A stretch of DNA of 64,000 bases from positions 34,410,001 through 34,474,000 of the forward strand of contig NC_087249.1 of assembly GCF_037042905.1 (NCBI RefSeq). The letters run 5' to 3'. The notes beneath the pieces are model-generated. The model saw nothing but the letters and a program-made list of their open reading frames with translations. It did no database searches and was not told where the DNA came from. Source of the DNA: Lytechinus pictus. Taxonomy: Eukaryota. Below are positions 23,901 through 61,017 of the stretch, piece after piece. A program made the position numbers and the translations under genes. The first letter of the stretch is position 1; each line of letters starts with the position of its first letter.

Positions 23901-26900
23901 AAATACGTTTTTGAATAATTTGTGTTTTGTAAAATTATACACCATTTGGTTAAGTTGATTATTCAACGATGAAACAAAAATCAGGGTCTAGCTATTCTTG
24001 AAAGAAAATTGATACATGTACTGCTTAATGCCAAAGCTTATTATAAATTGATGTGACATCATATGTAAGAACGATGTACTGTATTTCTGTTGTCTAACAT
24101 GTACTTAATGTACTAAAATGAAAATAATTGACTTGACTTAAAATCATGAAGATATTTATATTCTGTGAGATTTATATATTTTGCTTCAAAAAGACTATGG
24201 GTTGTGTTGATTGATATGTTAAATTAAAAGAAACAAATCAAGTGGAATATTTGAGTTGTGTTTCTCATTAGAATGTAGTAAAATAAAGTGTTACAGAATT
24301 CAGTGTTAACCAAGGAGAAGTTGGATTATTGGGTCATACAGAGAGACGGATTTAATTTAATCTTAGAACTTTGAATTAATCTCAAGCTCAAATAGAATAT
24401 AATCGGTTACTCTTTGAAATACTGGTCCCTAATGAATCTGATACATGTATTCCTGGTCCCAGCACAGAGCATTCTGTTGGATATTTTAACCTGATATTAT
24501 GAATTCTCTTGGACCTTACAAAAACTTTTAACTTTGATCAGCAAAAATATGAGATTCAAGAGAGGAGGGAGAGGGTGAGAGACAGATAACGTAAGATGGA
24601 GGGAAAAAAATAACTACATCTGCAAAATACTTGTGCTAATGAGATGCTGTGAAGTATTATGAGCTCTACATTCACAGATTTATTATTTCTAAGAATCGAC
24701 AGCTTGTAGCTGGTTAACAAAGAAATTCAATTTGTCTTGGTTGTACTTGAGATATAAATGTATTTTAATATAATTACAGAATGACCTAAAAATATCAGAG
24801 GGCAGATTTTTACTGTTTGTTATTAAAATGAAGAGCTCATTTGTACGTCACATCCTCTCTGTGGAACAATGAAGTGATAATGAAAAAAGAAGAACTTATT
24901 TCAGACTGTGAGTATTCTATTCATTCAACATACATAATTCATAACTTTTATCAATATCATTATTTTCTTTTAATCAAACTTTCACTAAAGTACTTCAAAT
25001 ATTTTCTGATACAGGGTGAATAAGCCTTATGAGTTTCATTCTCCTTTTAGATTTCCTGTAGCAACTGGAGGTGGATTTGAAAGCACACAGACTATTTAAA
25101 AACATGTGGGCTGCACAGATGTTACCTTACACTGCTCAAGAAGAAAGAAATATTATCCATACTGCATAATGCTCAAGTATCTTAAAGGCCATAATGGAGT
25201 TATTTCCTTTCACTGCTGGTTTAGATACCAGGGTCCCATATTGATAGCGACATGCATTGGCTGACAGTGATAGCGGCAGGAAACGGAGCAAGGATCTAGG
25301 CTTCCCTGGTTACATTCCTAACATGGTACGACCTGGTACAGACCAACATCAATCTCCTTCCACATACAGGATTGATTAATGTGAGGCATGTTCACATTCA
25401 AACACAATCACAATCTCTTACCCACCAAACACATGTACAGACCAACATCAATCTCCTTCCACATACAGGATTGATTAATGTGAGGCATGTTCACATTCAA
25501 ACACAATAACAATCTCTTACCCACCAAACACATGTACAGACCAACAGCAGCCTCCTTCGACATACAGAATTGATTAATATGAGGCATGTTCACATTCAGA
25601 CTTAAACACAATCTCTTACCCACCAGATGATGTGCTGACCTAGTCATTCTCCTTCCACATGCAGGATTGATTAATTTGAGGCATGTTCACATTCAGACTT
25701 TATCACTATCTTTTACCCACCAATGTACAGACATATGTCCAGTCTCCATCTACATACAGGATTGACTAATGTGAGGGATGTTCACATTAAAAGTTAATCA
25801 AAACCTGGTACATGTAGGTAGAGCAAAACATGAATTGAGCAACATCCTGATCTAGTATTGATAATTATTCAATATCATAGAAAAGTGACACACATTTCAA
25901 TATGTATCTCTCTCTTTGTTAAAGGGATGCTCCAGGCTGAAGATATATAGAATAAATAGAGTAAAATTCACAAAGCAAAATGCTGAAAATTTCATCAAAA
26001 TCAAAATCTGATTATACATACATGTAACAAAGTTATTGAATTTTAAAGATTTGCATTATTCCAGTGAAACAGTTCTAGGCATGTCTTCATGAATATTCAT
26101 TAGGTGGGTTGATGATGTTATATAGCCACTTGTTCTACCTACAACAAAACCAATTGGATTGACAACTGATTAAGTGCATTGATTATTTCTTGCTGCAACT
26201 TATTTTATAATAATGGAGATACATCATTTACACATTTATGAAAAAATGAAACAAATTATGATTTCATGTAATAACATAAGTAATAACATAAGAAAAATGA
26301 AAGTGGGGATGTGATATCATTAGCCACTTAGTGAATATTTATGAAGACATGCCTCGACCAGAACAATGCAAATCTTTAAAATTCAATAACTTTGTTATTT
26401 GTTATCCGAATTTGATGAAATTTTCAGCATTTTGCTCTGTGAATTTTTCTCTATTTACTAGTATATATATCAATATTTTCAGCCTGGAGCATCCCTTTAA
26501 TGAAGGGCACATTCACAATCAGATTTAATTAGGGTTAAAGAAAGTTAAACATTATGGTACCTACAGTCTGCACATACATGTACAACAGGTACTACAGCAT
26601 TCCCTACATGTAGCTAACAATAATAGCAACTTATTAATCAAATATGCTTTTAACACTGCACTTTTTGTCCTAAATTGGTGGGGCTAAGGGGGGGGGGTCT
26701 TAGCCCCACCAATTTCACCAATTTCACACTACGTTTTAGCAAAGTGGGCTAGCACAGTAAATAGTACGGTACTATCTGGCCCTGCAAAAAAGCAGGGTTA
26801 GCCGGCTTATTGTGGTGCTAGCACCACAATTGCGGTGGTAAGAGATGCAGTGTGAAACGAAACAGGGCTAAGCAAAAGCGGGGCTAAGCATTAGCCAATC

Positions 26901-32900: not shown

Positions 32901-35900
32901 TTAGGGGCATATCATCAATGCATAGATCTCTTGCAAAACAGTAGGCCTTTTATATTTGCAGCGTGTCTGTGATATGTATTTTACTATTCTCATTATGAAA
33001 TATTCACATTGAACATATCAGGCATGATTATCAAGTTTCTCCAAAGAGCTTTTTTACATTCTTCATGACTAAAAATATTTTCTCTCCGAGATGCATGCAT
33101 AAAATAATGTGTCTAATGATTTAAACAGCATCAACAAGAAAAATCTTTCAAATTTTCTGAGAAAACAAAATCTTATAGAATTTTGTAACTTATATCATAA
33201 GGAGCTGCTTACGTGTGACATGACAAGTAGAAAAAAATGTAATGCTGTTATTTCATGAAGTATTTTTGCCAAGCCTAATGAATAAAGATGTCTCTCTATT
33301 TTAAAGCTTTTATTATTAAAACCCCACATGACTTCAGGATAAATTCCTCTTTAATGTTCAGATAAAGGGGCTGAGTTTCTGAAAGGTATTTGAATCATGA
33401 ATCTTAATAACCATCAATGATGATCTATATCATTCATGAACACCTACAGTATCATTTACCCATCAAAGGATTAGTACTAAAAAAAACAAGACCCTAGTAC
33501 TTCTCAAAATCAAGATCATTAAAAAAAAAGAATAGGGTCAATCCACGTCAAATCAACCAATTTTCAGACAATTTGTCACCCTTCGAAATTTTGCTAATTT
33601 TAAGGCATTTTCAGCTATTTTTAGATCAATGTCAAGGTCAAAAGATAAAGATGTGACTTTATGTATTATTTGGATATTAAAATACAACCTGAAAGGAACA
33701 TGATTTGCAATTATCAGCTTAAAATCATCATTTGTGTTAAAATGACACATAAGTGAAAGTCGGTGTAAACAACCTCTAAAGATGGGAAATTGGCGGATTA
33801 AAGATTTTGGGTGAATTTCAGCCATATTTTCAAGGTCATTGTGTTGAAAAAAAGGAATTAATACTAGATCATCCAAGTACTTATTATGGACTACCAATAC
33901 TGCAAATATCAACATGATCAGGCTTTTAGTCTGTGAGAAAATCAAATCTGAAATGTGTTGTAAAACTCATAGGTGTTGTGAATATGCTGATTTTAAGCAT
34001 TTTCAGCTATTTTTAGATCAATTTCAAGGTCAAATGATAAAGATGTGACTTTATGTATTATTTGGATATTAAAATACCAGCTGAAAGGAACATGATTTGC
34101 AATTATCAGCTTAAAATCATCATTTGTGTTAAAATGACACATAATTGAAAGTCGGTGTAAACAACCTCTAACGATGAGATATTGGCGTATTAAAAATTTT
34201 GGGTGAATTTCAGCCATCTTTTCAAGGTCATTGTCTTGTAAAACAAATTAATTTATAATAGATCATCCAAGTACTCATTATGGACTACCAATACTGCAAA
34301 TATCAATATGATCAGGCATTCAGTCTGTGAGAAAATCAATTTTGAAATGTGTTGTAAAACTCACGGGTGTTGTGAATACGCTAATTTTAAGGCATTTTCA
34401 GCTATTTTTAGATCAATGTCAAGGTCAAAAGATAAAGATGTGACTTTATGTATTATTTGGATATTAAAATACAACCTGAAAGGAACATGATTTGCAATTA
34501 TCAGCTTAAAATCATCATTTGTGTTAAAATGACACATAAGTGAAAGTCGGTGTAAACAACCTCTAACGATGGGAAATTGGCGGATTAAAGATTTTGGGTG
34601 AATTTCAGCCATCTTTTCAAGGTCATTGTCTTGTAAAACAAATGAATTAATACTAGATCATCCAAGTACTCATTATGGACTACCAATACTGCAAATATCA
34701 ACATGATCAGGCTTTTAGTCTATGAGAAAATCAATTCTGAAATGTGTTGTAAAGCTCACGGGTGTTGTGAATATGCTAATTTTAAGGCATTTACAGCTAT
34801 TTTTAGATCAATGTCAAGGTCAAAAGGTAAAGATATTGCTTTATATATTATTTGGATATTAACGAAGAACCTGAAAGGAACAAGATTTGCAATTATCAGC
34901 TTAAAATCATCATTTGTGTTGAAATGACACACAAGTAAAAGTACCTGTAAATACAGTTTAGCGCCCTATAATCACAGAAAATCGACCTGATTTATTGTTT
35001 TTGATGATTTTCAGCTGTATTTTTCAAGGTCATTGCCAATTTGTCAAACTATTTGTGATGCATATCCTTTTAGTACTAATTACAGACTACCATTACAGAC
35101 AATACCAGTATTTGTTGGCTTTTCATTTCTGATTTATTGCAATTTGAAATGTGCTGATAAACCTTTATGTATCGTTTTACATTGGTTTAGGGTGTTTACG
35201 ACCATTTTCGAATGCGTAAACCAGCTATTAAACATTTCGGTCACAAACAATTTTAAGTATCCTATGAAAATATAGGTAATTGTCTATCAGTATACAGAAA
35301 TTGGTGTTGCTCCTTGATGGGACGAGGGGTGATCCGTGACCTTGAACTTGGCAACTTTTAGAAAAAATCCAACTTTGAGGGCGCCCTACAAGAGATCGAC
35401 GCGCACATTTAGGCCAATTTTTTGTAGGTCTGTTGAGCAAGTGGTAGTCTTCAAATATGCATACTATTGGGCTCTAAGCTAATTGAATTTGGAAGTTATG
35501 AGCTTCCAAACATGCACCCAAAATCACTGACTTGGACGCTTAACACCATTTTCAGTGACCTCGTGCGCAATAATGGCTGGTCAGATCCGTGCCATAATAT
35601 ACTGTGCATGTTAAGACTAAAAAGTTCTTCCAATTTACAGAAAATAAGCACTCTACCTCATCAAACTTGGTTGCAGCAGTCAATCAAAAATAGTAAATTT
35701 TTTTTGAATTTGGTTGTTTGGCCACGCATTGGTTGCTAAGGGAGGCCGTATCTTAGCAACCGTTTGACCTTGGGGCAAAATATTTCAGATTTTTCCGTCA
35801 GACACTTGGGGGAACATTTGGTGCGAGTTTAAAGAAAATCGAAGGGGGTCGGGTGACAAGCATTGGTTGATTTGACATGGATTGACCCAATAGGAAAGCT

Positions 35901-41900: not shown

Positions 41901-44900
41901 TAATACGTGTGAGGAACGCGATACTGGCTCTAAATCACCAATTTTGAGACTAACCGAAGGATGGATATGGAGTGAAATTACATTGAAAAGTAAGAAGATA
42001 AGATTTTTATTCTTTTTAAGGTCGTTTGGTGCATGATTTTTACAATAAATATGCATTTAGTTCCACCTTTGTCATTCGGAGTATCAGAGCGAGTTCACCA
42101 TCTTGATGTTCGGGTAGGTGTAGCATAGTGTAGCGGTAGTGGAGCCTTCACTAACATCACTTGAGGTAGTATAAAAGTGACTTACGGTTGCAGAGTTATG
42201 CGTTATAACATTGACCTTAAAATGACCTTTGACCTTACCATGTGACCTCTGATTTCGCCATGATATGCAGGTCTCCTCAGTACATCTAAAAACCCAGGTT
42301 TGGGTGAAAAGTGACTTATGGTTGCGGAGTTATGTGTCATAAGAGTCTTGCACGTAAACTTTAACGTTGACCTGAAACTGACCTTTGACCTTACCATGTA
42401 ACCTCCGACTGCAGCATAACACACAGGTCCCCTAAGTACATCTACCATCCAAGTTTGGTTGAAAATTGACTCACGGTTGCGGAGTTATGTGTCATAAGAG
42501 AGTCTCGCACGTAAACTACAACGTTGACCTGAAAACAACCTTTGACCTTACTATGTGACCTCCGACTGCAGCATAACATGCAGGTCCCCAAAGTACATCT
42601 ACCATCCAAGTTTGGTTGAAAAGTGACTTACGGTTGCGGAGTTATGGGTCATAATGTTTGTGACGGACGGACAACATTTGGATCCCTTACGGTAGTCTTG
42701 CCTTCACCTCTGGTGGGCGAGATAAAAATGACTATCATCAGGTCCACACCTCCTTCCCCTCCTCATCTCCCTCTACCCCTTACTCCTCCCATCCTCTCTA
42801 CCCCTCACTCCTCCCATCTCTACCCCTTACTCCTCCCACCCTCTCTACCCCTTACTCCTCCCGTCCTCTCTACCCCTTACTCCTTCCATCCTCTCTACCC
42901 CTCACTCCTTCCATATCTACCCCTCACTCCTCCCATCTCTACCCCTTACTCCTCCCACCCTCTCTACCCCTTACTCCTCCCGTCCTCTCTACCCCTCACT
43001 CCTCCCATCTCTACCCCTTGCTCCTCCCACCCTCTCTACCCCTTACTCCTCCCACCCTCTCTACCCCTTATTCCTTCCATCCTCTCTACCCCTCACTCCT
43101 CCCATCTCTACCCCTTACTCCTCCCACCCTCTCTACCCCTTACTCCTCCCGTCCTCTCTACCCCTTACTCCTCCCATCCTCTCTACCCCTCACTCCTCCC
43201 ATCTCTACCCCTTACTCCTCCCTTCCTCTCTACCCCTTACTCCTCCCATCCTCTACCATTTACTCCTCCCACCCTCTCTACCCCTTACTCCTCCCGTCCT
43301 CTCTACCCCTTACTCCTCCCATCCTCTCTACCCCTTACTCCTCCCATCCTCTCTACCCCTTACTCCTCCCATCCTCATGATTCTCTTTCATCATCTACAT
43401 TTCTTCCTTCTTATTTTAATCTTCCTCTCATATCCCCCTTCTATTTCTTTGACATGTCCACTTCATATTAGCTTTTAGCTTCTTTAATCTAAACGTTAGA
43501 CTTTTTCATACTTTGAAACAAAGACTGCTCAACTTCTGGACAGCCAAAAACCAACCAAGACTAAAGTTGTGCAAAGTCTTAAAAACATTGGTTGGAAACT
43601 AAAAATAAAAAGTTTGATCTGCAAGATTTGCTACCAACCGCCAATCTGCCTGCTCAATCGTCTGCTGACTCCTATATACACCCCCTTCAAAATGTGTTCT
43701 GTGGGGATGTCACTCGGTTACCAGAAATTCACAACATATATGCTCATATTGAATAGGCGTAATGCAAAATGAATATGCCTACCCTCTTTTTGGGTGTTGG
43801 TTTCTTGGTCACCTCTCCATCTTCCAAGGTTTTAAAGGGCCTTCCCCGTTTCTTGGGGGATGCAAGTGGTGTATTGATCTTGGTGAAGGGGGAGCTGGAA
43901 TTTGACCCTTTCCTCGGTGAGCTACCAGGAGATGATGCTGACTGTGAGGAGTTTAACTAGAAAGAAAAGAGAAACAGAATTCAGATGTTATAACAATAGG
44001 AGGAATATAATTGGAAAGAAAATAGAAATGCAATTCAGATGTTTATATTCTTATTCAACATCAAACATGAATTGAATTATCAATTACCAAATTGTAGTTT
44101 CCCATTTGTATTATCAAAACTTGTGTGCATCTGAATCCATTGTCTATTCATCCATATTAGACATCTCCGTGTGTATTTTGTATTGACATGTACATGTAAG
44201 CAATACAAATTTCCACTGTAAACATTACTTATTGAATTGAATTTAATGACATAAGGATGAATTTAATAGGAAAGAGAAGAGAGAGATAGAATTCAGATAA
44301 CAGCAAATTTATGTTAAAATTCATGACTGAACATTTATACCATTGCCCCTCTTTGTCTATCTATCTATTACATCACAAAAACTCAGAATAACAATTCTCC
44401 CAAATAAAATATAATTCTCTACGAAAAAAAAATGTCTCACCTTCTTCTTCCCTGCCATAGGTTCTCTGGAATAATCTTTAGTTGGTTTGCTGATAGACTT
44501 CAAGAAAATATCATCATCGTCATCATCATCATCCGATGGAGGGTGGTATGGGGAAGTGGTCTGGCCCTATAGGGATGGAGAATTGAGAGAAAATGTTTGG
44601 AAAATTTATCTTTTCATCCTCCTTTTTTATTATATGTCTTAAATTTTAGTGATTACAAGGAAAAGTTACCTAAAGTGCACCTCCCTGCTGATATCATCTA
44701 AGACTTTACTATTTCAGCAAATGAACAGCTACTCCTCATATGTAGCCCTATATATCTACGAATTTATTATTCCATGATACTCAGGATTGGAAAACAAACA
44801 AAGTGAATTTGGATAAGGATTGCTACATACTGGTACAATAAAAAGAATATACTTTATATTTTCAAGGAAATTACACTTCAGTAAATTGTCAAGCTTTTAA

Positions 44901-57471: not shown

Positions 57472-58495
57472 AAGGGAAGGGAAATAAAAGGCCAAATACA
57501 ACACATAAAAAAAAAGCGGAAGGAAAGAAAAATGCATGTGAGAATCATCCCGAATGTTATGTCAAAATCTATTACAAAATTGATATTTGTAATAAAAGTG
57601 ACAAAAGTTTTGCTCGCTCGCCTCTTTATCTGGCAGGCGCGTAGCTAGGGGGCGGTGCCCCCTGAACAGGCCCCCCCCCCAAAAAAAAAAAAAAGAAGGG
57701 GGGAAAAGAGAAAAGAAAAAGCAAAATGAGAAAAGGGAGGGTATATAATGTAATTTATAATTGTTTTTCCTTAATGTTTTTTTTTTGTCAAAACAATAAA
57801 AACCTTAACGAAATGTTTTTCAATAATTAGGTCTACACTCGCGATTTGATAAAATAGCAGCCATCTATAAGGTTTAAAATGGCTAAATATCCAGAGGTAT
57901 CGAGACCCACCTGCTGATATAGCACTGGGGTACACAGATGGAAGGGTTAGGCCCAGTGGCCCCCGAATATTCTACAACCAAGATAAAAAAAGAAATGAAG
58001 GGAATTAAAGAAAAGGAAAAGTGTAAGATATCCATCTCAAAGTTCGATTCGCACGAAAAGGTTTTTTCTCGCTTGCTTCACTCGCTTGGAAAATATAAAG
58101 CAACTTTATTCCCACGCGCCATATAAGTTGTACATTGTGCCCCCTCTTTCTTTCTTTTATTTTTTTTACTCATCACGCTACTGCCACACAGAGGTTTGCC
58201 CTAATGATCGTGGACAATCATAAAAAATATCATTTTCATACCATGTGACTGGGAAATATTTGGCTCCACCCCCCCCCCCTCTCGATCCCTGTAGCGATTT
58301 TGATTTGATAGGGGCCTATAACTGATGTAAGCTTCAATATAAAATCATAACGGAAAGAACACCTTGAATACAGGCCAACCAGCCTAACGACATTGCCACG
58401 TCACGTGACAACCAGTATTAAACGAGGATGTGTACAACCCTATGACGACAAGGCTTGTCGCAAAAGTTGAGCATGTTCTGGACAAAAAGGCTTCA

Positions 58496-59551
58496 CACAG
58501 TGGCAAATTGTATAGAACGGATAGCGGTGCGTTCAACGCTAGCGGGCGTGTACATTTTGCTTATTACGTGACGTCATCCAGCCACTGCACAATGAACAAG
58601 GTTATGATATAACCTTGTTCTCTGTCATATCTCCATGTGTGGCAAAATAAGGGTGGCAATATTTGACTTATTTTCTCTTTTTTTTTTTGACAAATGCTTG
58701 ATTTTTTTACACTGACAGTTTCCATTACACCAATTCATCATACAACTTGGCTCTTAAATAAATTTGATTCTTTAAATTATTTTTTTCTTAATTAAAAATA
58801 GAGATTGAAAAATGAAAATTTTCTTGCCATATTACTTTCCACCAATAGAGGGCGTACACAAAAATATGCCAAAAACTCAAGTTTTGGAGCGCTCTTGGGA
58901 ATAACAAAAGTTATTCCCAAGTTACTAATGAAAAATAAATTGCAACTGTATGGAAATTAGTAATTTTGGTCACAAAAGTGATATTTTAATGATTTTTTAA
59001 AGTGTGTGCTCTGTACAGCATTGGCATACCATAGTCCTAACTGTAGATTCCCCACAGACAGGATCGTTGCAGTGAGCTAGTGATATTTTATATGAATTAT
59101 GAAAGGTATTCTCGGAGGACCTATTTTCTCACCGATACCGCACAGGTAAGCGAATTTCGATTACTTCTTGCTTTTCTGGCAAAATCTTACGAATTAGCGT
59201 CCATATGGCATCGTGTTCGTTGGAGTTTGTAGAGTCTATCGCAATGTGTACAAAGTCAATTGATTTCCGGGTTTCGGAGCGTCGCGTGAATATGCATGAA
59301 ATTGCCGAGTCTCAATAATTTTTGATCGATACTGGAGCGATCCGATCACGAACAAAGACCATTTCCCGCGTAGACAATGTGACCGGATATTGTTATCGCG
59401 ATCGATACTTTCGCACGCAGTCCGAAGGAATTATTTTGGCGACCACGTAGTCATGACGTGATCTGCACGATTGGCCAATCAGCGGTCTCCGATTCGCTGA
59501 GCCAAGACGGTCTATCCATTGTACACAGTCTATGGACAATTTGCCACTGTG
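58496..59551. mobile_element. Transib/RAG-like non-autonomous transposon, copy 1 (CACAGTG ends, 5-bp TSD CTTCA)
   Basis: CTTCA|CACAGTGGCAAATTGT ... ACAATTTGCCACTGTG|CTTCA. Confidence 0.85.
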
Positions 59552-59599
59552 CTTCAATACCCCAAGAAAAGACCAGGCGAGTACTATTAATACATTATA

Positions 59600-60295
59600 C
59601 AGTGGCAAATTGTATAGAACGGATAGCGGTGCGTTCAACGCTAGCGGGCGTGTACATTTTGCTTATTACATGACGTCATCCAGACACTGCCGAGAGCCAA
59701 TTTATGAATGAAAGTATAGTAAGCATGCGCAGTGCAAGACTTCCATTGCCCCACACAGTATTCCACCAAAACAAGTGTGCAATTCTCTATCACCTCGTAC
59801 CAAAATCGACCTAGAATTTCACTTTCCTGTATTTTATATGAATTATGAAAGGTATTCTTGGAGGATCTATTTTCTCACCGATACCCCACAGGTAAGCGAA
59901 TTTCGATTACTTCTTGCTTTTCCGTCAAAATCTTACGAATTAGCGTCAATATGGCATCGTGTTCGTTGGAGTTTGTAGTCTATCACAACGTGTACAAAGT
60001 CAATTGATTTCCGGGTTTCAGAGCGTCGAGTGAATAAGCATGAAATTGCCGAGTCACGATAATTTTCGATCGATACTGGAGCGATCCGATCACGAACCAA
60101 GACCATTTCCCGCGTAGACAATGTGACCGGATATCGTTGTCGCTATCGATACTTTCGCACGCAGTCCGAAGGAATTATTTTGGCGACCACGTAGTCATGA
60201 CGTGATCTGCGCGATTGGCCAATCAGCGGTCTCCGATTCGCTGAGCCGAGACGGTCTATCCGTTGTACACAGTCTATGGACAATTTGCCACTGTG
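59600..60295. mobile_element. Transib/RAG-like non-autonomous transposon, copy 2 (5-bp TSD TTATA; left end lacks the terminal CA)
   Basis: TTATA|CAGTGGCAAATTGT ... ACAATTTGCCACTGTG|TTATA; shares ~90 bp at the left and ~470 bp at the right with copy 1. Confidence 0.8.
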
Positions 60296-60468
60296 TTATA
60301 CTCCATAAAGAGTATCTAGGGTCTAATTTAAAAATAGATTTCATCATGGAGCTCCATGGTGAGATAGAGTAATTTAAGTCCAACTTTTATTCGCGTGCAC
60401 TCACTTTTTCAACACAGGAAAGAATGGGCATGGTGCCTAGATAACCCAGAGAGCTCCGGCCCGCTTCA

Positions 60469-61017
60469 GAGCCCAGGAGCTCACCATGTATTTTAATACC
60501 CATACTCATGGGACTAGGGTAGATTATGGTCAAAATATCTAGCAAAATAAATTGTGAAAACAGAAATTATGCACTTACCACGATTATATGGATGAAGGTC
60601 TATCGTTTGGCAGTATCCTGACATCGAGGCGCAGACTGGAACCTCAAAAAAACGAAAAGTTCTGTCGCGGTAGCTCTCCTTCTTTCAAAATTCAAAACAA
60701 AATGGCCGATCGAGACCGAGGCTATATAGACTTGGTCAAATTCGCGCATGCGCCCTACATCCTCCGTACCGGTCTCGATCGGCCATTTTGCTATGAATTG
60801 TGAAAGAAGAGCTACCGCGACAGAACTTTTCGTTTTTTTGAGGTTCCAGTCTAGTCTGTGCCTCGATGTCAGGATACTGCCACACGATAGACCTTCATCC
60901 ATATAATCGTGGTAAGTGCATAATTTCTGTTTTCACAATTTATTTTGCTAGATATTTTGACCACAATCTACCCTAGTCCCGTGAGAATGGGTAAATACAC
61001 GGTGAGCTTCTGGGCTC
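60469..61017. repeat. Long inverted repeat (~250-bp arms, ~52-bp spacer)
   Basis: 60469-60718 is the near-identical reverse complement of 60771-61017. Confidence 0.9.

What the first reader, a model, noticed from the sequence alone, without database searches (positions are those of the whole stretch)
58496..60295. Transib/RAG-like transposon ends with a perfect RSS heptamer and a 12/23-like spacer asymmetry
Seen: the elements end in CACAGTG, identical to the V(D)J RSS heptamer (copy 2's left end has lost the first CA), and carry 5-bp TSDs (CTTCA; TTATA). Beyond the 16-bp TIR the two ends diverge, then share the 9-mer AACGGATAG. It lies 13 bp from the heptamer at the left end (58516-58524) and 24 bp from it at the right end (60256-60264; AATGGATAG in copy 1, consistent with CpG decay). 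The offset is 11 bp, one helical turn. Read one base earlier, the spacers are exactly 12 and 23. Established: CAC ends and 5-bp TSDs characterise Transib and RAG-like transposons, the ancestors of RAG1/2. Inference: this may be a family whose transposase pairs asymmetric heptamer-spacer-nonamer ends, using a nonamer unrelated to ACAAAAACC.
Basis: partly seen in the sequence, partly recalled or inferred. Interest (0 to 1): 0.9.

Follow-up and report, generated by a model that had tools for sequence, protein, structure and literature searches.

The report
Young RAG/Transib-type mini-transposons, asymmetric ends

Summary
Copy 1 (58496-59551) has the target-site duplication (TSD) CTTCA. Copy 2 (59600-60295) has TTATA and has lost its first CA. 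Both end in CACAGTG and share a 16-bp terminal inverted repeat (TIR). AACGGATAG lies 13 bp from the heptamer at one end and 24 bp at the other.

- **Family:** about 135 exact TIRs occur in the genome (reversed-pattern control: 1). The genome is Lytechinus pictus, by a 100% protein match.
- **TSDs:** nine of ten independent copies have perfect 5-bp TSDs.
- **Empty sites:** contigs from four public runs skip copy 1 by exactly 1061 bp (1056 + 5). In two of those runs a contig lacks both copies.
- **Age:** copies differ 1.6-2.7% from their consensus.
- **Asymmetry:** three subfamilies all keep the 13/24 layout, and 21 short+long pairs were found.

What is not shown:
- No coding copy with these ends was found. 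The genome's RAG1-like genes are RAGL-B type and have no such TIR in the flanks I could read. I had no Transib query.
- The subfamilies are too close to show that the spacing is selected.

Asymmetric bipartite ends are already published for Transib, ProtoRAG, RAGL-A and a ctenophore Transib. Other windows of this genome were flagged for the same kind of element. Verdict: a new member of a known kind, of moderate interest.

The parts
58491..58495 (.). Left target-site duplication of copy 1 (CTTCA)
   Evidence: The same 5 bases recur at 59552-59556. The empty-site joint removes the element plus one TSD (1061 bp).
58496..59551 (+). Copy 1, a 1056-bp non-autonomous element, short end on the left and long end on the right
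   Evidence: Contigs of 4 public runs skip it exactly (joint 58489->59551, 6 shared letters).
58496..58524 (+). Copy 1 short end (29 bp): heptamer CACAGTG, then GCAAATTGT, ATAG and AACGGATAG
   Evidence: The same 29-mer is found genome-wide.
58589..59083 (.). About 495 bp of an unrelated, highly repeated sequence that replaces about 139 bp of the family's interior in copy 1
   Evidence: BLAST of copy 1 against copy 2. Contig depth here is very high (table 2).
59512..59551 (-). Copy 1 long end (40 bp); the distal motif reads AATGGATAG (CpG decay)
59552..59556 (.). Right target-site duplication of copy 1 (CTTCA)
59595..59599 (.). Left target-site duplication of copy 2 (TTATA)
   Evidence: A contig that lacks both copies has exactly the 61 letters expected for single TSDs (X12 record 10).
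59600..60295 (+). Copy 2, 696 bp, same orientation as copy 1, first two bases (CA) missing
   Evidence: It differs 2.0% from the family consensus.
59600..59626 (+). Copy 2 short end (27 of 29 bp), with AACGGATAG at 59618-59626
60256..60295 (-). Copy 2 long end (40 bp): heptamer, GCAAATTGT, CCATAGACTGTGTAC, AACGGATAG (read on the minus strand)
   Evidence: an exact match to the long-end pattern.
60296..60300 (.). Right target-site duplication of copy 2 (TTATA)

Best explanation
The two elements are independent insertions, 48 bp apart, of one young family of non-autonomous (MITE-like, about 0.7 kb, no ORF) DNA transposons of the Transib/RAG-like superfamily in a sea urchin genome. A RAG1-type DDE transposase supplied from elsewhere would cut at the CAC of each end and reinsert the element with a 5-bp staggered cut, which gives the 5-bp duplications.

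Each end is bipartite:
- a heptamer identical to the consensus RSS heptamer;
- a 9-bp block identical at both ends (GCAAATTGT);
- a variable block of 4 bp at one end and 15 bp at the other;
- a shared 9-bp distal block (AACGGATAG).

This is the TR1-TR2-TR3/4-TR5 design described for ProtoRAG, and it is the same geometry as a published ctenophore Transib. The 11-bp offset, about one helical turn, places the distal block on the same face of the helix at both ends.

Shown here: the family, the TSDs, the empty sites, the youth of the copies, and the inheritance of the asymmetry by all subfamilies. Inferred: the type of transposase, and that the distal block and its unequal spacing help to pair one short with one long end.
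For: Sequence and coordinates.
- Family size: 135 exact TIRs against 1 control. 58 short-type and 92 long-type ends at up to 3 mismatches, against 0 controls.
- TSDs: perfect 5-bp TSDs in 9 of 10 independent copies: CTTCA, TTATA, CCTTC, AAATA, CTGTA, GGGAA, CAGTG, ACAAC, TGGTG.
- Empty sites: the joint 58489->59551 skips 1061 bp (1056 + 5) in contigs of all 4 runs laid. A contig of X12 bridges 58489 to 60313 with 61 letters between, which means both copies are absent and each TSD is single.
- Age: copies are 1.6-2.7% from their consensus.
- Coding: no ORF of 100 aa or more in the longer copy L041 and no similarity to RAG1L.
- Pairing: 21 convergent short+long pairs can be read.
- Subfamilies: A (ATAG), B (GTAG) and C (GTAC, with heptamer CACAGCG) all have 13/24 spacing.
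- Literature: 5-bp TSDs are unique to Transib and RAG among eukaryotic DNA transposons, and some Transib families have RSS12/RSS23-like ends (PMC1131882). ProtoRAG has the TR1-TR2-TR3/4-TR5 design and prefers a 5'/3' pair (PMC8289069). MleTransib_2823 ends read CACAGTGGGGAT, then 4-5 or 15 bp, then ATGACATTAAG (PMC9435367 supplement).
Against: - No autonomous copy was found. None of the 50 RAG1L-like matches in the genome lies between or near a TIR pair.
- The roughly 10 kb upstream and 1.5 kb downstream of ten RAG1L loci hold no such TIR and no similarity to the element.
- TSDs are about 40% G+C, not the GC-rich targets reported for Transib and RAG (PMC1131882).
- All subfamilies are close relatives, so shared asymmetry may be inheritance only.
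- About 40 of the long-end matches are one truncated copy carried inside another amplified repeat. They are not independent insertions.
Confidence: 0.8

Rival explanations
1. One reading: the transposase enforces pairing of one short (12/13) with one long (23/24) end, as the 12/23 rule does, and reads AACGGATAG as a nonamer equivalent.
For: - Every pair found is short+long.
- The offset is 11 bp in all three subfamilies.
- The shared 9-mer at that offset is unlikely by chance (0.035%).
- ProtoRAG prefers a 5'/3' pair over 5'/5' or 3'/3' (PMC8289069).
- Asymmetric TIRs are called a common feature of the superfamily (PMC9435367).
Against: - The subfamilies differ by only 2-3 spacer bases, so nothing separates selection from descent.
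- The RAG1L proteins of this genome lack the GRPR/K motif of the nonamer-binding domain and carry the CCGHC tail. The literature ties that tail to recognition of the first 15-17 bp and relative insensitivity to asymmetry (PMC7204232).
Confidence: 0.35
2. The asymmetry is a historical accident. One TIR of the founder gained or lost 11 bp, only the first 16 bp (heptamer plus TR2-like block) matter for cleavage, and all descendants simply inherited the indel.
For: - In subfamily C the short end equals the long end minus one 11-bp block.
- The perfect TIR stops at 16 bp, close to the 15-17 bp core reported for RAGL-B (PMC7204232).
- The family is young and homogeneous.
Against: - The distal 9-mer stays intact in the consensus of all three subfamilies, while the heptamer itself varies (CACAGTG versus CACAGCG).
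- The same 4/15 geometry appears in an unrelated ctenophore Transib. Asymmetry of 9-11 bp recurs in AanRAGL, PflRAGL-A and several Transib families.
Confidence: 0.4
3. The partner is the sea urchin's own RAG1L/RAG2L (RAGL-B), which is usually regarded as domesticated and without TIRs.
For: - The genome holds RAG1L-B core reading frames without stops, including the CCGHC tail.
- The end design matches the heptamer+TR2 design of RAGL-B.
- No Transib-like match appeared in the RAG1 profile or RAG1L searches.
Against: - No TIR or element similarity lies near any RAG1L locus.
- The literature reports no TIRs around echinoid RAGL genes, and immobility in S. purpuratus (PMC9885083).
- True Transib transposases and a non-autonomous TransibN1_SP family are known in S. 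purpuratus (PMC1131882).
- My searches were not tuned to Transib.
Confidence: 0.2
4. The element belongs to a DNA-transposon superfamily other than Transib/RAG-like, or the pattern is a chance inverted repeat.
For: No transposase link has been established.
Against: - 5-bp TSDs with CAC...GTG ends are diagnostic for Transib and RAG (PMC1131882).
- There are 135 copies of the TIR against 1 control.
- The empty sites are exact.
Confidence: 0.03

Closest known systems
Transib families with RSS12/RSS23-like termini (Transib5 of D. melanogaster; Transib2_AG and TransibN1-N3_AG of A. gambiae; Kapitonov and Jurka 2005, PMC1131882)
   Same: - CAC heptamer ends and 5-bp TSDs.
- One short-spacer and one long-spacer end (12/23 +/- 1).
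- They include non-autonomous families.
   Different: - Those have an A-rich nonamer-like block and the heptamer CACAATG; here the heptamer is CACAGTG and the distal block is AACGGATAG.
- Those insert in GC-rich targets; here targets are about 40% G+C.
- The host here is an echinoderm.
MleTransib_2823, a Subgroup I Transib of Mnemiopsis leidyi (Tao et al. 2022, PMC9435367 supplement)
   Same: - Ends begin CACAGTGG.
- A conserved proximal block, then 4-5 or 15 variable bases, then a conserved distal block that is not A-rich. This is the same 4/15 geometry, about 11 bp of asymmetry.
   Different: - Proximal block of 12 bp against 16 bp here.
- Different sequences after position 8.
- That element is autonomous and encodes a transposase with a CCGHC tail; here there is no coding copy.
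ProtoRAG (RAGL-B) TIRs of amphioxus: TR1-TR2-TR3/4-TR5 (PMC8289069)
   Same: - Heptamer, an adjacent conserved 9-10-bp TR2, a variable part, a conserved 9-bp distal TR5 unrelated to the RSS nonamer, and unequal lengths at the two ends.
- 5-bp TSDs.
   Different: - Heptamer CACTATG.
- Spacers of 27/31 bp (offset 4) against 13/24 (offset 11).
- ProtoRAG carries convergent RAG1L/RAG2L genes.
PflRAGL-A TIRs of Ptychodera flava (PMC10462144)
   Same: Heptamer-TR2-asymmetric spacer-distal element design, a 10-bp asymmetry, and 5-bp TSDs.
   Different: [quoted passage not shown]
- The RAG1L proteins of this genome lack that motif.
V(D)J recombination signal sequences (12RSS/23RSS)
   Same: Identical heptamer CACAGTG, and spacers of 12/23 in one register.
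   Different: - There is no ACAAAAACC-like nonamer.
- The first 9 spacer bases are conserved and identical at both ends.
- These are mobile elements with TSDs, not signals beside gene segments.

Membership tests
Transib/RAG-like superfamily of DNA transposons | 5-bp target-site duplication | tested here: met
   9 of 10 independent copies have perfect 5-bp TSDs. The empty site removes the element plus 5 bp.
Transib/RAG-like superfamily of DNA transposons | Termini 5'-CAC...GTG-3' with a heptamer like CACAGTG or CACAATG | tested here: met
   CACAGTG in subfamilies A and B; CACAGCG or CACAGTG in subfamily C.
Transib/RAG-like superfamily of DNA transposons | Mobilised by, or encoding, a RAG1-core-like DDE transposase | tested here: inconclusive
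   No coding copy with these TIRs was found. RAG1L-B genes exist elsewhere without these TIRs. No Transib query was available. Two long TIR pairs (C3, 5.9 kb; C11, 7.4 kb) could not be read.
RAGL-B / ProtoRAG-type TIR | Heptamer followed by a conserved 9-10-bp TR2 shared by both ends, with an A-rich stretch | tested here: met
   GCAAATTGT is identical at both ends, with AAA at positions 10-12. The literature places the A-rich part at positions 8-10 (PMC7204232), so the register differs by 2.
RAGL-B / ProtoRAG-type TIR | TIRs bracket a convergent RAG1L-RAG2L gene pair | tested here: inconclusive
   No TIR within about 10 kb upstream or 1.5 kb downstream of ten RAG1L loci. Farther downstream flanks were not readable. 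The Pfam RAG2 profile found nothing, and its controls were silent too.
V(D)J RSS pair | Heptamer CACAGTG | tested here: met
V(D)J RSS pair | A-rich nonamer ACAAAAACC with conserved positions 5 and 6 | tested here: not met
   The distal block is AACGGATAG or (G/C)AACGGATA.
V(D)J RSS pair | Spacers of 12 +/- 1 and 23 +/- 1 bp with variable sequence | tested here: inconclusive
   The lengths fit (13/24, or 12/23 one base earlier). The sequence is not variable: the first 9 bases are identical at both ends, and the subfamilies differ at only 2-3 positions.
MITE-like non-autonomous element | Short, no transposase ORF, many near-identical copies with TIRs and TSDs | tested here: met
   Elements are 0.66-0.71 kb. 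There is no ORF of 100 aa or more in L041, and only short ORFs without RAG1L similarity in L042 and L043. More than 100 ends were found. Copies are about 2% from their consensus.

The most novel reading that the evidence does not exclude
These young, insertion-polymorphic elements are natural substrates of the sea urchin's own RAG1L/RAG2L. That pair is currently regarded as domesticated, without TIRs and of unknown function. If so, an echinoid RAGL would still act on RSS-like ends that have a perfect heptamer and a one-helical-turn (12/23-like) asymmetry.
Probability: 0.15. Interest if true: 0.75.

Novelty: new member of a known kind. Interest (0 to 1): 0.4.

Why it matters
Asymmetric, RSS-like transposon ends are central to the argument over how the 12/23 rule of V(D)J recombination arose. 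That argument sets RAG-like transposon ends against a "Transib seed". This family adds a clean, abundant and apparently recently mobile example in an echinoderm, a group whose RAG-like genes are reported to lack TIRs. It has a perfect RSS heptamer, a TR2-like block and an 11-bp offset. That gives ready-made substrates (13/24, 13/13, 24/24) for testing sea urchin RAG1L/RAG2L or Transib transposases. It does not change the picture, because the design itself has been known since 2005 and has been tested functionally in ProtoRAG.

Tried and rejected
- **Coding copy among longer TIR pairs.** L041 (2965 bp), L042 (2081 bp) and L043 are the same element with other repeats inserted. They have no long ORF and no RAG1L similarity.
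- **RAG1L loci as partners.** Ten loci with up to 10 kb upstream were scanned for the TIR at up to 3 mismatches, for the 9-mer, and by BLAST with the element. Nothing was found. Homology breaks between RAG1L copies fall at an intron/exon border, not at transposon ends.
- **Downstream flanks and long pairs.** I did not try to get those letters by another route.
- **RAG2.** The Pfam RAG2 profile gave no match, but its controls were silent too, so this says nothing.
- **Transib transposase.** I had no usable query sequence. The divergent hit P0051 proved to be RAG1L-like, not Transib.
- **Ends better conserved than the interior?** The more divergent copies L042 and L043 differ mostly by indels and insertions, so the comparison has no power.
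- **Other families with the same heptamer and 9-mer but another spacer.** Only subfamily C and scattered chance matches turned up.
- **Other CAC-ended elements with 5-bp TSDs.** A scan of about 250 kb of held sequence found none.
- **Literature.** No paper in the library contains the TIR sequence. The supplements of PMC7204232 do not list it.

Full report
**What is in the window.**
Reading 58300-60500 confirms every letter of the finding.
- Copy 1 runs from 58496 to 59551 (1056 bp) between two CTTCA.
- Copy 2 runs from 59600 to 60295 (696 bp) between two TTATA. Its left end begins CAGTGG, so the first CA of the heptamer is missing.
- Both copies lie in the same orientation, 48 bp apart, each with its own duplication. 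They are therefore two separate insertions.
- The ends share CACAGTGGCAAATTGT (16 bp). After it the left end continues ATAG-AACGGATAG and the right end continues CCATAGACTGTGTAC-AACGGATAG. The 9-mer therefore sits 13 and 24 bp from the heptamer, or 12 and 23 if read one base earlier.
- In copy 1 the right-hand 9-mer reads AATGGATAG, a CpG-to-TpG change.
- Copy 1 differs from copy 2 by about 495 bp of an unrelated, very abundant repeat (58589-59083). This replaces about 139 bp of the family's interior.

**Is it more than chance?**
- The 16-mer occurs 135 times in the 812-Mb genome, against once for the reversed control.
- The 29-nt short end has 58 matches and the 40-nt long end has 92 matches at up to three mismatches. 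Both controls gave none.
- In shuffles, two 60-nt subterminal stretches share a 9-mer in 0.7% of trials, and at an offset of 10-12 bp in 0.035%.
- A global alignment shows that the short end aligns completely to the long end with gaps of 2 and 9 bp. In subfamily C the short end is the long end minus a single 11-bp block.
- The best description is therefore a pair of TIRs of 29 and 40 bp that differ by an 11-bp indel.

**Are they transposons, and of which kind?**
- Ten independent copies could be read in full. Nine have perfect 5-bp duplications: CTTCA, TTATA, CCTTC, AAATA, CTGTA, GGGAA, CAGTG, ACAAC and TGGTG. The tenth is off by what looks like one lost base.
- Laying the contigs of four public runs on 57800-61000 gave, in every run, a contig that joins 58489 to 59551. 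It skips 1061 bp, with six letters fitting both sides. That is the element (1056) plus one duplication (5).
- One contig of run X12 bridges 58489 to 60313 with exactly 61 letters between. This is the number expected if both copies are absent and each duplication is single. A contig of X6 behaves the same way.
- The flanks in these runs are only about 90-93% identical to the window. The runs may therefore come from divergent haplotypes or from close relatives; their names are coded. Either way the insertions are younger than that split.
- Copies differ by 1.6-2.7% from their consensus and are still rich in CpG (observed/expected 1.55).
- According to Kapitonov and Jurka (PMC1131882), 5-bp duplications occur in only one superfamily of eukaryotic DNA transposons, Transib (with RAG). 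CAC ends are its second hallmark. On these two tested features the family belongs to the Transib/RAG-like superfamily.

**A caveat on copy number.**
Most of the best genome matches cover only bases 29-698 of copy 2 and have identical flanks on both sides. They are one left-truncated copy, with the variant AACGAATAG, riding inside a larger repeat that was itself amplified. That larger repeat received the element with the duplication TATTT (loci L003, L020, L025). About 40 of the 92 long-end matches are of this kind and do not count as insertions of the family.

**The asymmetry across the family.**
Pattern searches separate three subfamilies by their short end:
- A: GCAAATTGTATAG.
- B: GCAAATTGTGTAG.
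- C: ACAAATTGTGTAC, mostly with the heptamer CACAGCG.

All three have 13 bp before AACGGATAG. The matching long ends all have 24 bp. From the coordinates I read 21 convergent short+long pairs 0.27-3 kb apart. I found no short+short or long+long pair, apart from one nested cluster on C16 that cannot be resolved without its sequence.

So the 9-mer and its spacing are conserved wherever I could look. That cannot be passed, because the subfamilies differ at only two or three spacer positions and are related by single substitutions (ATAG, GTAG, GTAC). Shared descent explains the pattern as well as selection does. The first nine "spacer" bases are identical at both ends, which is unlike an RSS spacer.

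**The partner transposase.**
- *Identity of the genome.* A 595-aa RAG1-core reading frame on C182 is 100% identical to a protein named [quoted passage not shown] on a contig of the same length. A second protein, from the C4 contig, carries the same species name.
- *RAG1-like genes present.* The Pfam RAG1 profile finds 17 stretches and the RAG1L protein finds 50. Two or three core reading frames carry no stop codons; the rest are fragments.
- *Their type.* Their best solved relative is amphioxus RAG1L (6b40, E about 1e-150). HzTransib matches only at about 1e-5. They lack a GRPR/K motif and end in the Cx2Cx3GHx4C tail. That makes them RAGL-B type.
- *No link to the element.* None of these loci lies between or near TIRs. 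Up to 10 kb upstream and 1.5 kb downstream hold neither the TIR nor any similarity to the element.
- *Long copies.* The longer copies I could read are the same element with nested repeats. No RAG1L match falls inside them.
- *Transib untested.* I had no Transib query, so an intact Transib transposase is not excluded. Such transposases and a non-autonomous TransibN1_SP family are known in another sea urchin.
- *Weighing.* My odds are roughly one half for a Transib partner, one fifth for RAGL-B, and the rest for a partner that is lost or not assembled.

**How it most likely works.**
By analogy with the enzymes studied, a RAG1-type transposase nicks at the CAC of each end, releases the element and inserts it with a 5-bp stagger.

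The end design matches the one dissected in ProtoRAG:
- TR1 is the heptamer and is essential.
- TR2 is 9-10 bp, adjacent and conserved.
- The TR3/4 blocks are variable.
- TR5 is 9 bp and distal, unrelated to the RSS nonamer, and needed for efficient and precise recombination in cells.
- ProtoRAG prefers a 5'/3' pair over 5'/5' or 3'/3'.

In the present family the corresponding blocks are CACAGTG, GCAAATTGT, 4 or 15 bases, and AACGGATAG. The 11-bp offset would put the distal block on the same face of the helix at both ends, one turn further out on the long end. This is the geometry thought to underlie the 12/23 rule. It is an inference; nothing here shows that the distal block is bound or that the spacing is enforced.

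**Comparison with what is known.**
- Several Transib families have RSS12-like and RSS23-like ends (PMC1131882; reviewed in PMC8355894).
- PflRAGL-A has a heptamer-TR2-asymmetric spacer-nonamer design with a 10-bp asymmetry.
- AanRAGL has 4/13-bp spacers between a 13-bp and a 10-bp block, and all Subgroup I Transibs have asymmetric TIRs.
- The ctenophore element MleTransib_2823 has ends reading CACAGTGGGGAT, then 4-5 or 15 bases, then ATGACATTAAG. This is the same heptamer plus G, the same 4/15 geometry, and a distal block that is not A-rich.

Against that background this family is a new member of a known kind. What is particular to it:
- The host group. TIRs have not been found around echinoid RAGL genes, and those genes are considered immobile.
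- The youth of the family and its empty sites.
- The exact RSS heptamer.

No paper in the library contains the TIR sequence. Repbase or Dfam could not be consulted, so the family may already be catalogued there. Other first-stage notes on this genome flag the same kind of element in at least eight other windows. These are unchecked and add no independent support.

**Verdict.**
A functional 12/23-like rule and the partner are not shown, and the concept is not new.
- Interest is moderate (0.4), mainly as a convenient substrate set for testing sea urchin RAG-like or Transib enzymes.

Noticed in passing
L007-L019, L021-L024, L027-L030 (for example G000:C10:9568488-9569159); ancestor-like copies L003, L020, L025: A left-truncated copy of the element (first 28 bp replaced, distal motif AACGAATAG) sits inside a larger repeat with identical flanks on both sides. 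That larger repeat has been amplified to dozens of copies. The element is a passenger there, and this inflates apparent copy number.
   Followed up: partly
window 58589-59083: About 495 bp inside copy 1 belong to another, extremely abundant repeat (summed contig depth 100-1000 times that of the flanks). Parts of it recur in L043.
   Followed up: partly
window 60497-60993: Directly downstream of copy 2 lies a foldback element: nested inverted repeats with arms of 144 nt at 96% complementarity, plus arms of 49 nt and 40 nt. It is probably an unrelated MITE.
   Followed up: no
L020 and L025 (G000:C5:10329933-10330661; C17:25439555-25440284): A 24-bp palindromic insert (catgaagctattaatagcttcatg), flanked by a duplicated GTTGTAC, interrupts the long end between the spacer and the distal motif in two copies of the composite repeat.
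   Followed up: no
L043 (G000:C7:9198728-9207383), positions 1001, 6992 and 7656: Two left ends, 6 kb apart, are both preceded by TGGTG, and the single right end is followed by TGGTG. This may be a rearranged or partly duplicated insertion.
   Followed up: no
window 59660-59690 and 60185-60235 (copy 2 interior): Both subterminal regions carry promoter-like motifs: TGACGTCA-like sites near both ends and a palindromic double CCAAT box near the right end. A CAG|GTAAG donor-like site lies about 290 bp in. The element is CpG-rich (observed/expected 1.55). It may retain the 5' parts of the parent's gene or genes.
   Followed up: no
G000:C9:18143011-18195824: A tandem array of degenerate RAG1L-core fragments repeats about every 4 kb over roughly 50 kb.
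   Followed up: no
G000:C8:14271101-14271244 and C8:14647020-14647172: Two weak matches (E about 1e-5, 43-46% identity over about 50 aa) to the RAG1L region around the second catalytic acid, in open frames of 129-156 aa. They could be distant RAG1/Transib-like genes. Their sequence could not be read.
   Followed up: no
window 42746-43420; 33599-35080; 25336-25824: The window also holds several tandem arrays: about 25-bp units, about 394-bp units and about 99-bp units.
   Followed up: no
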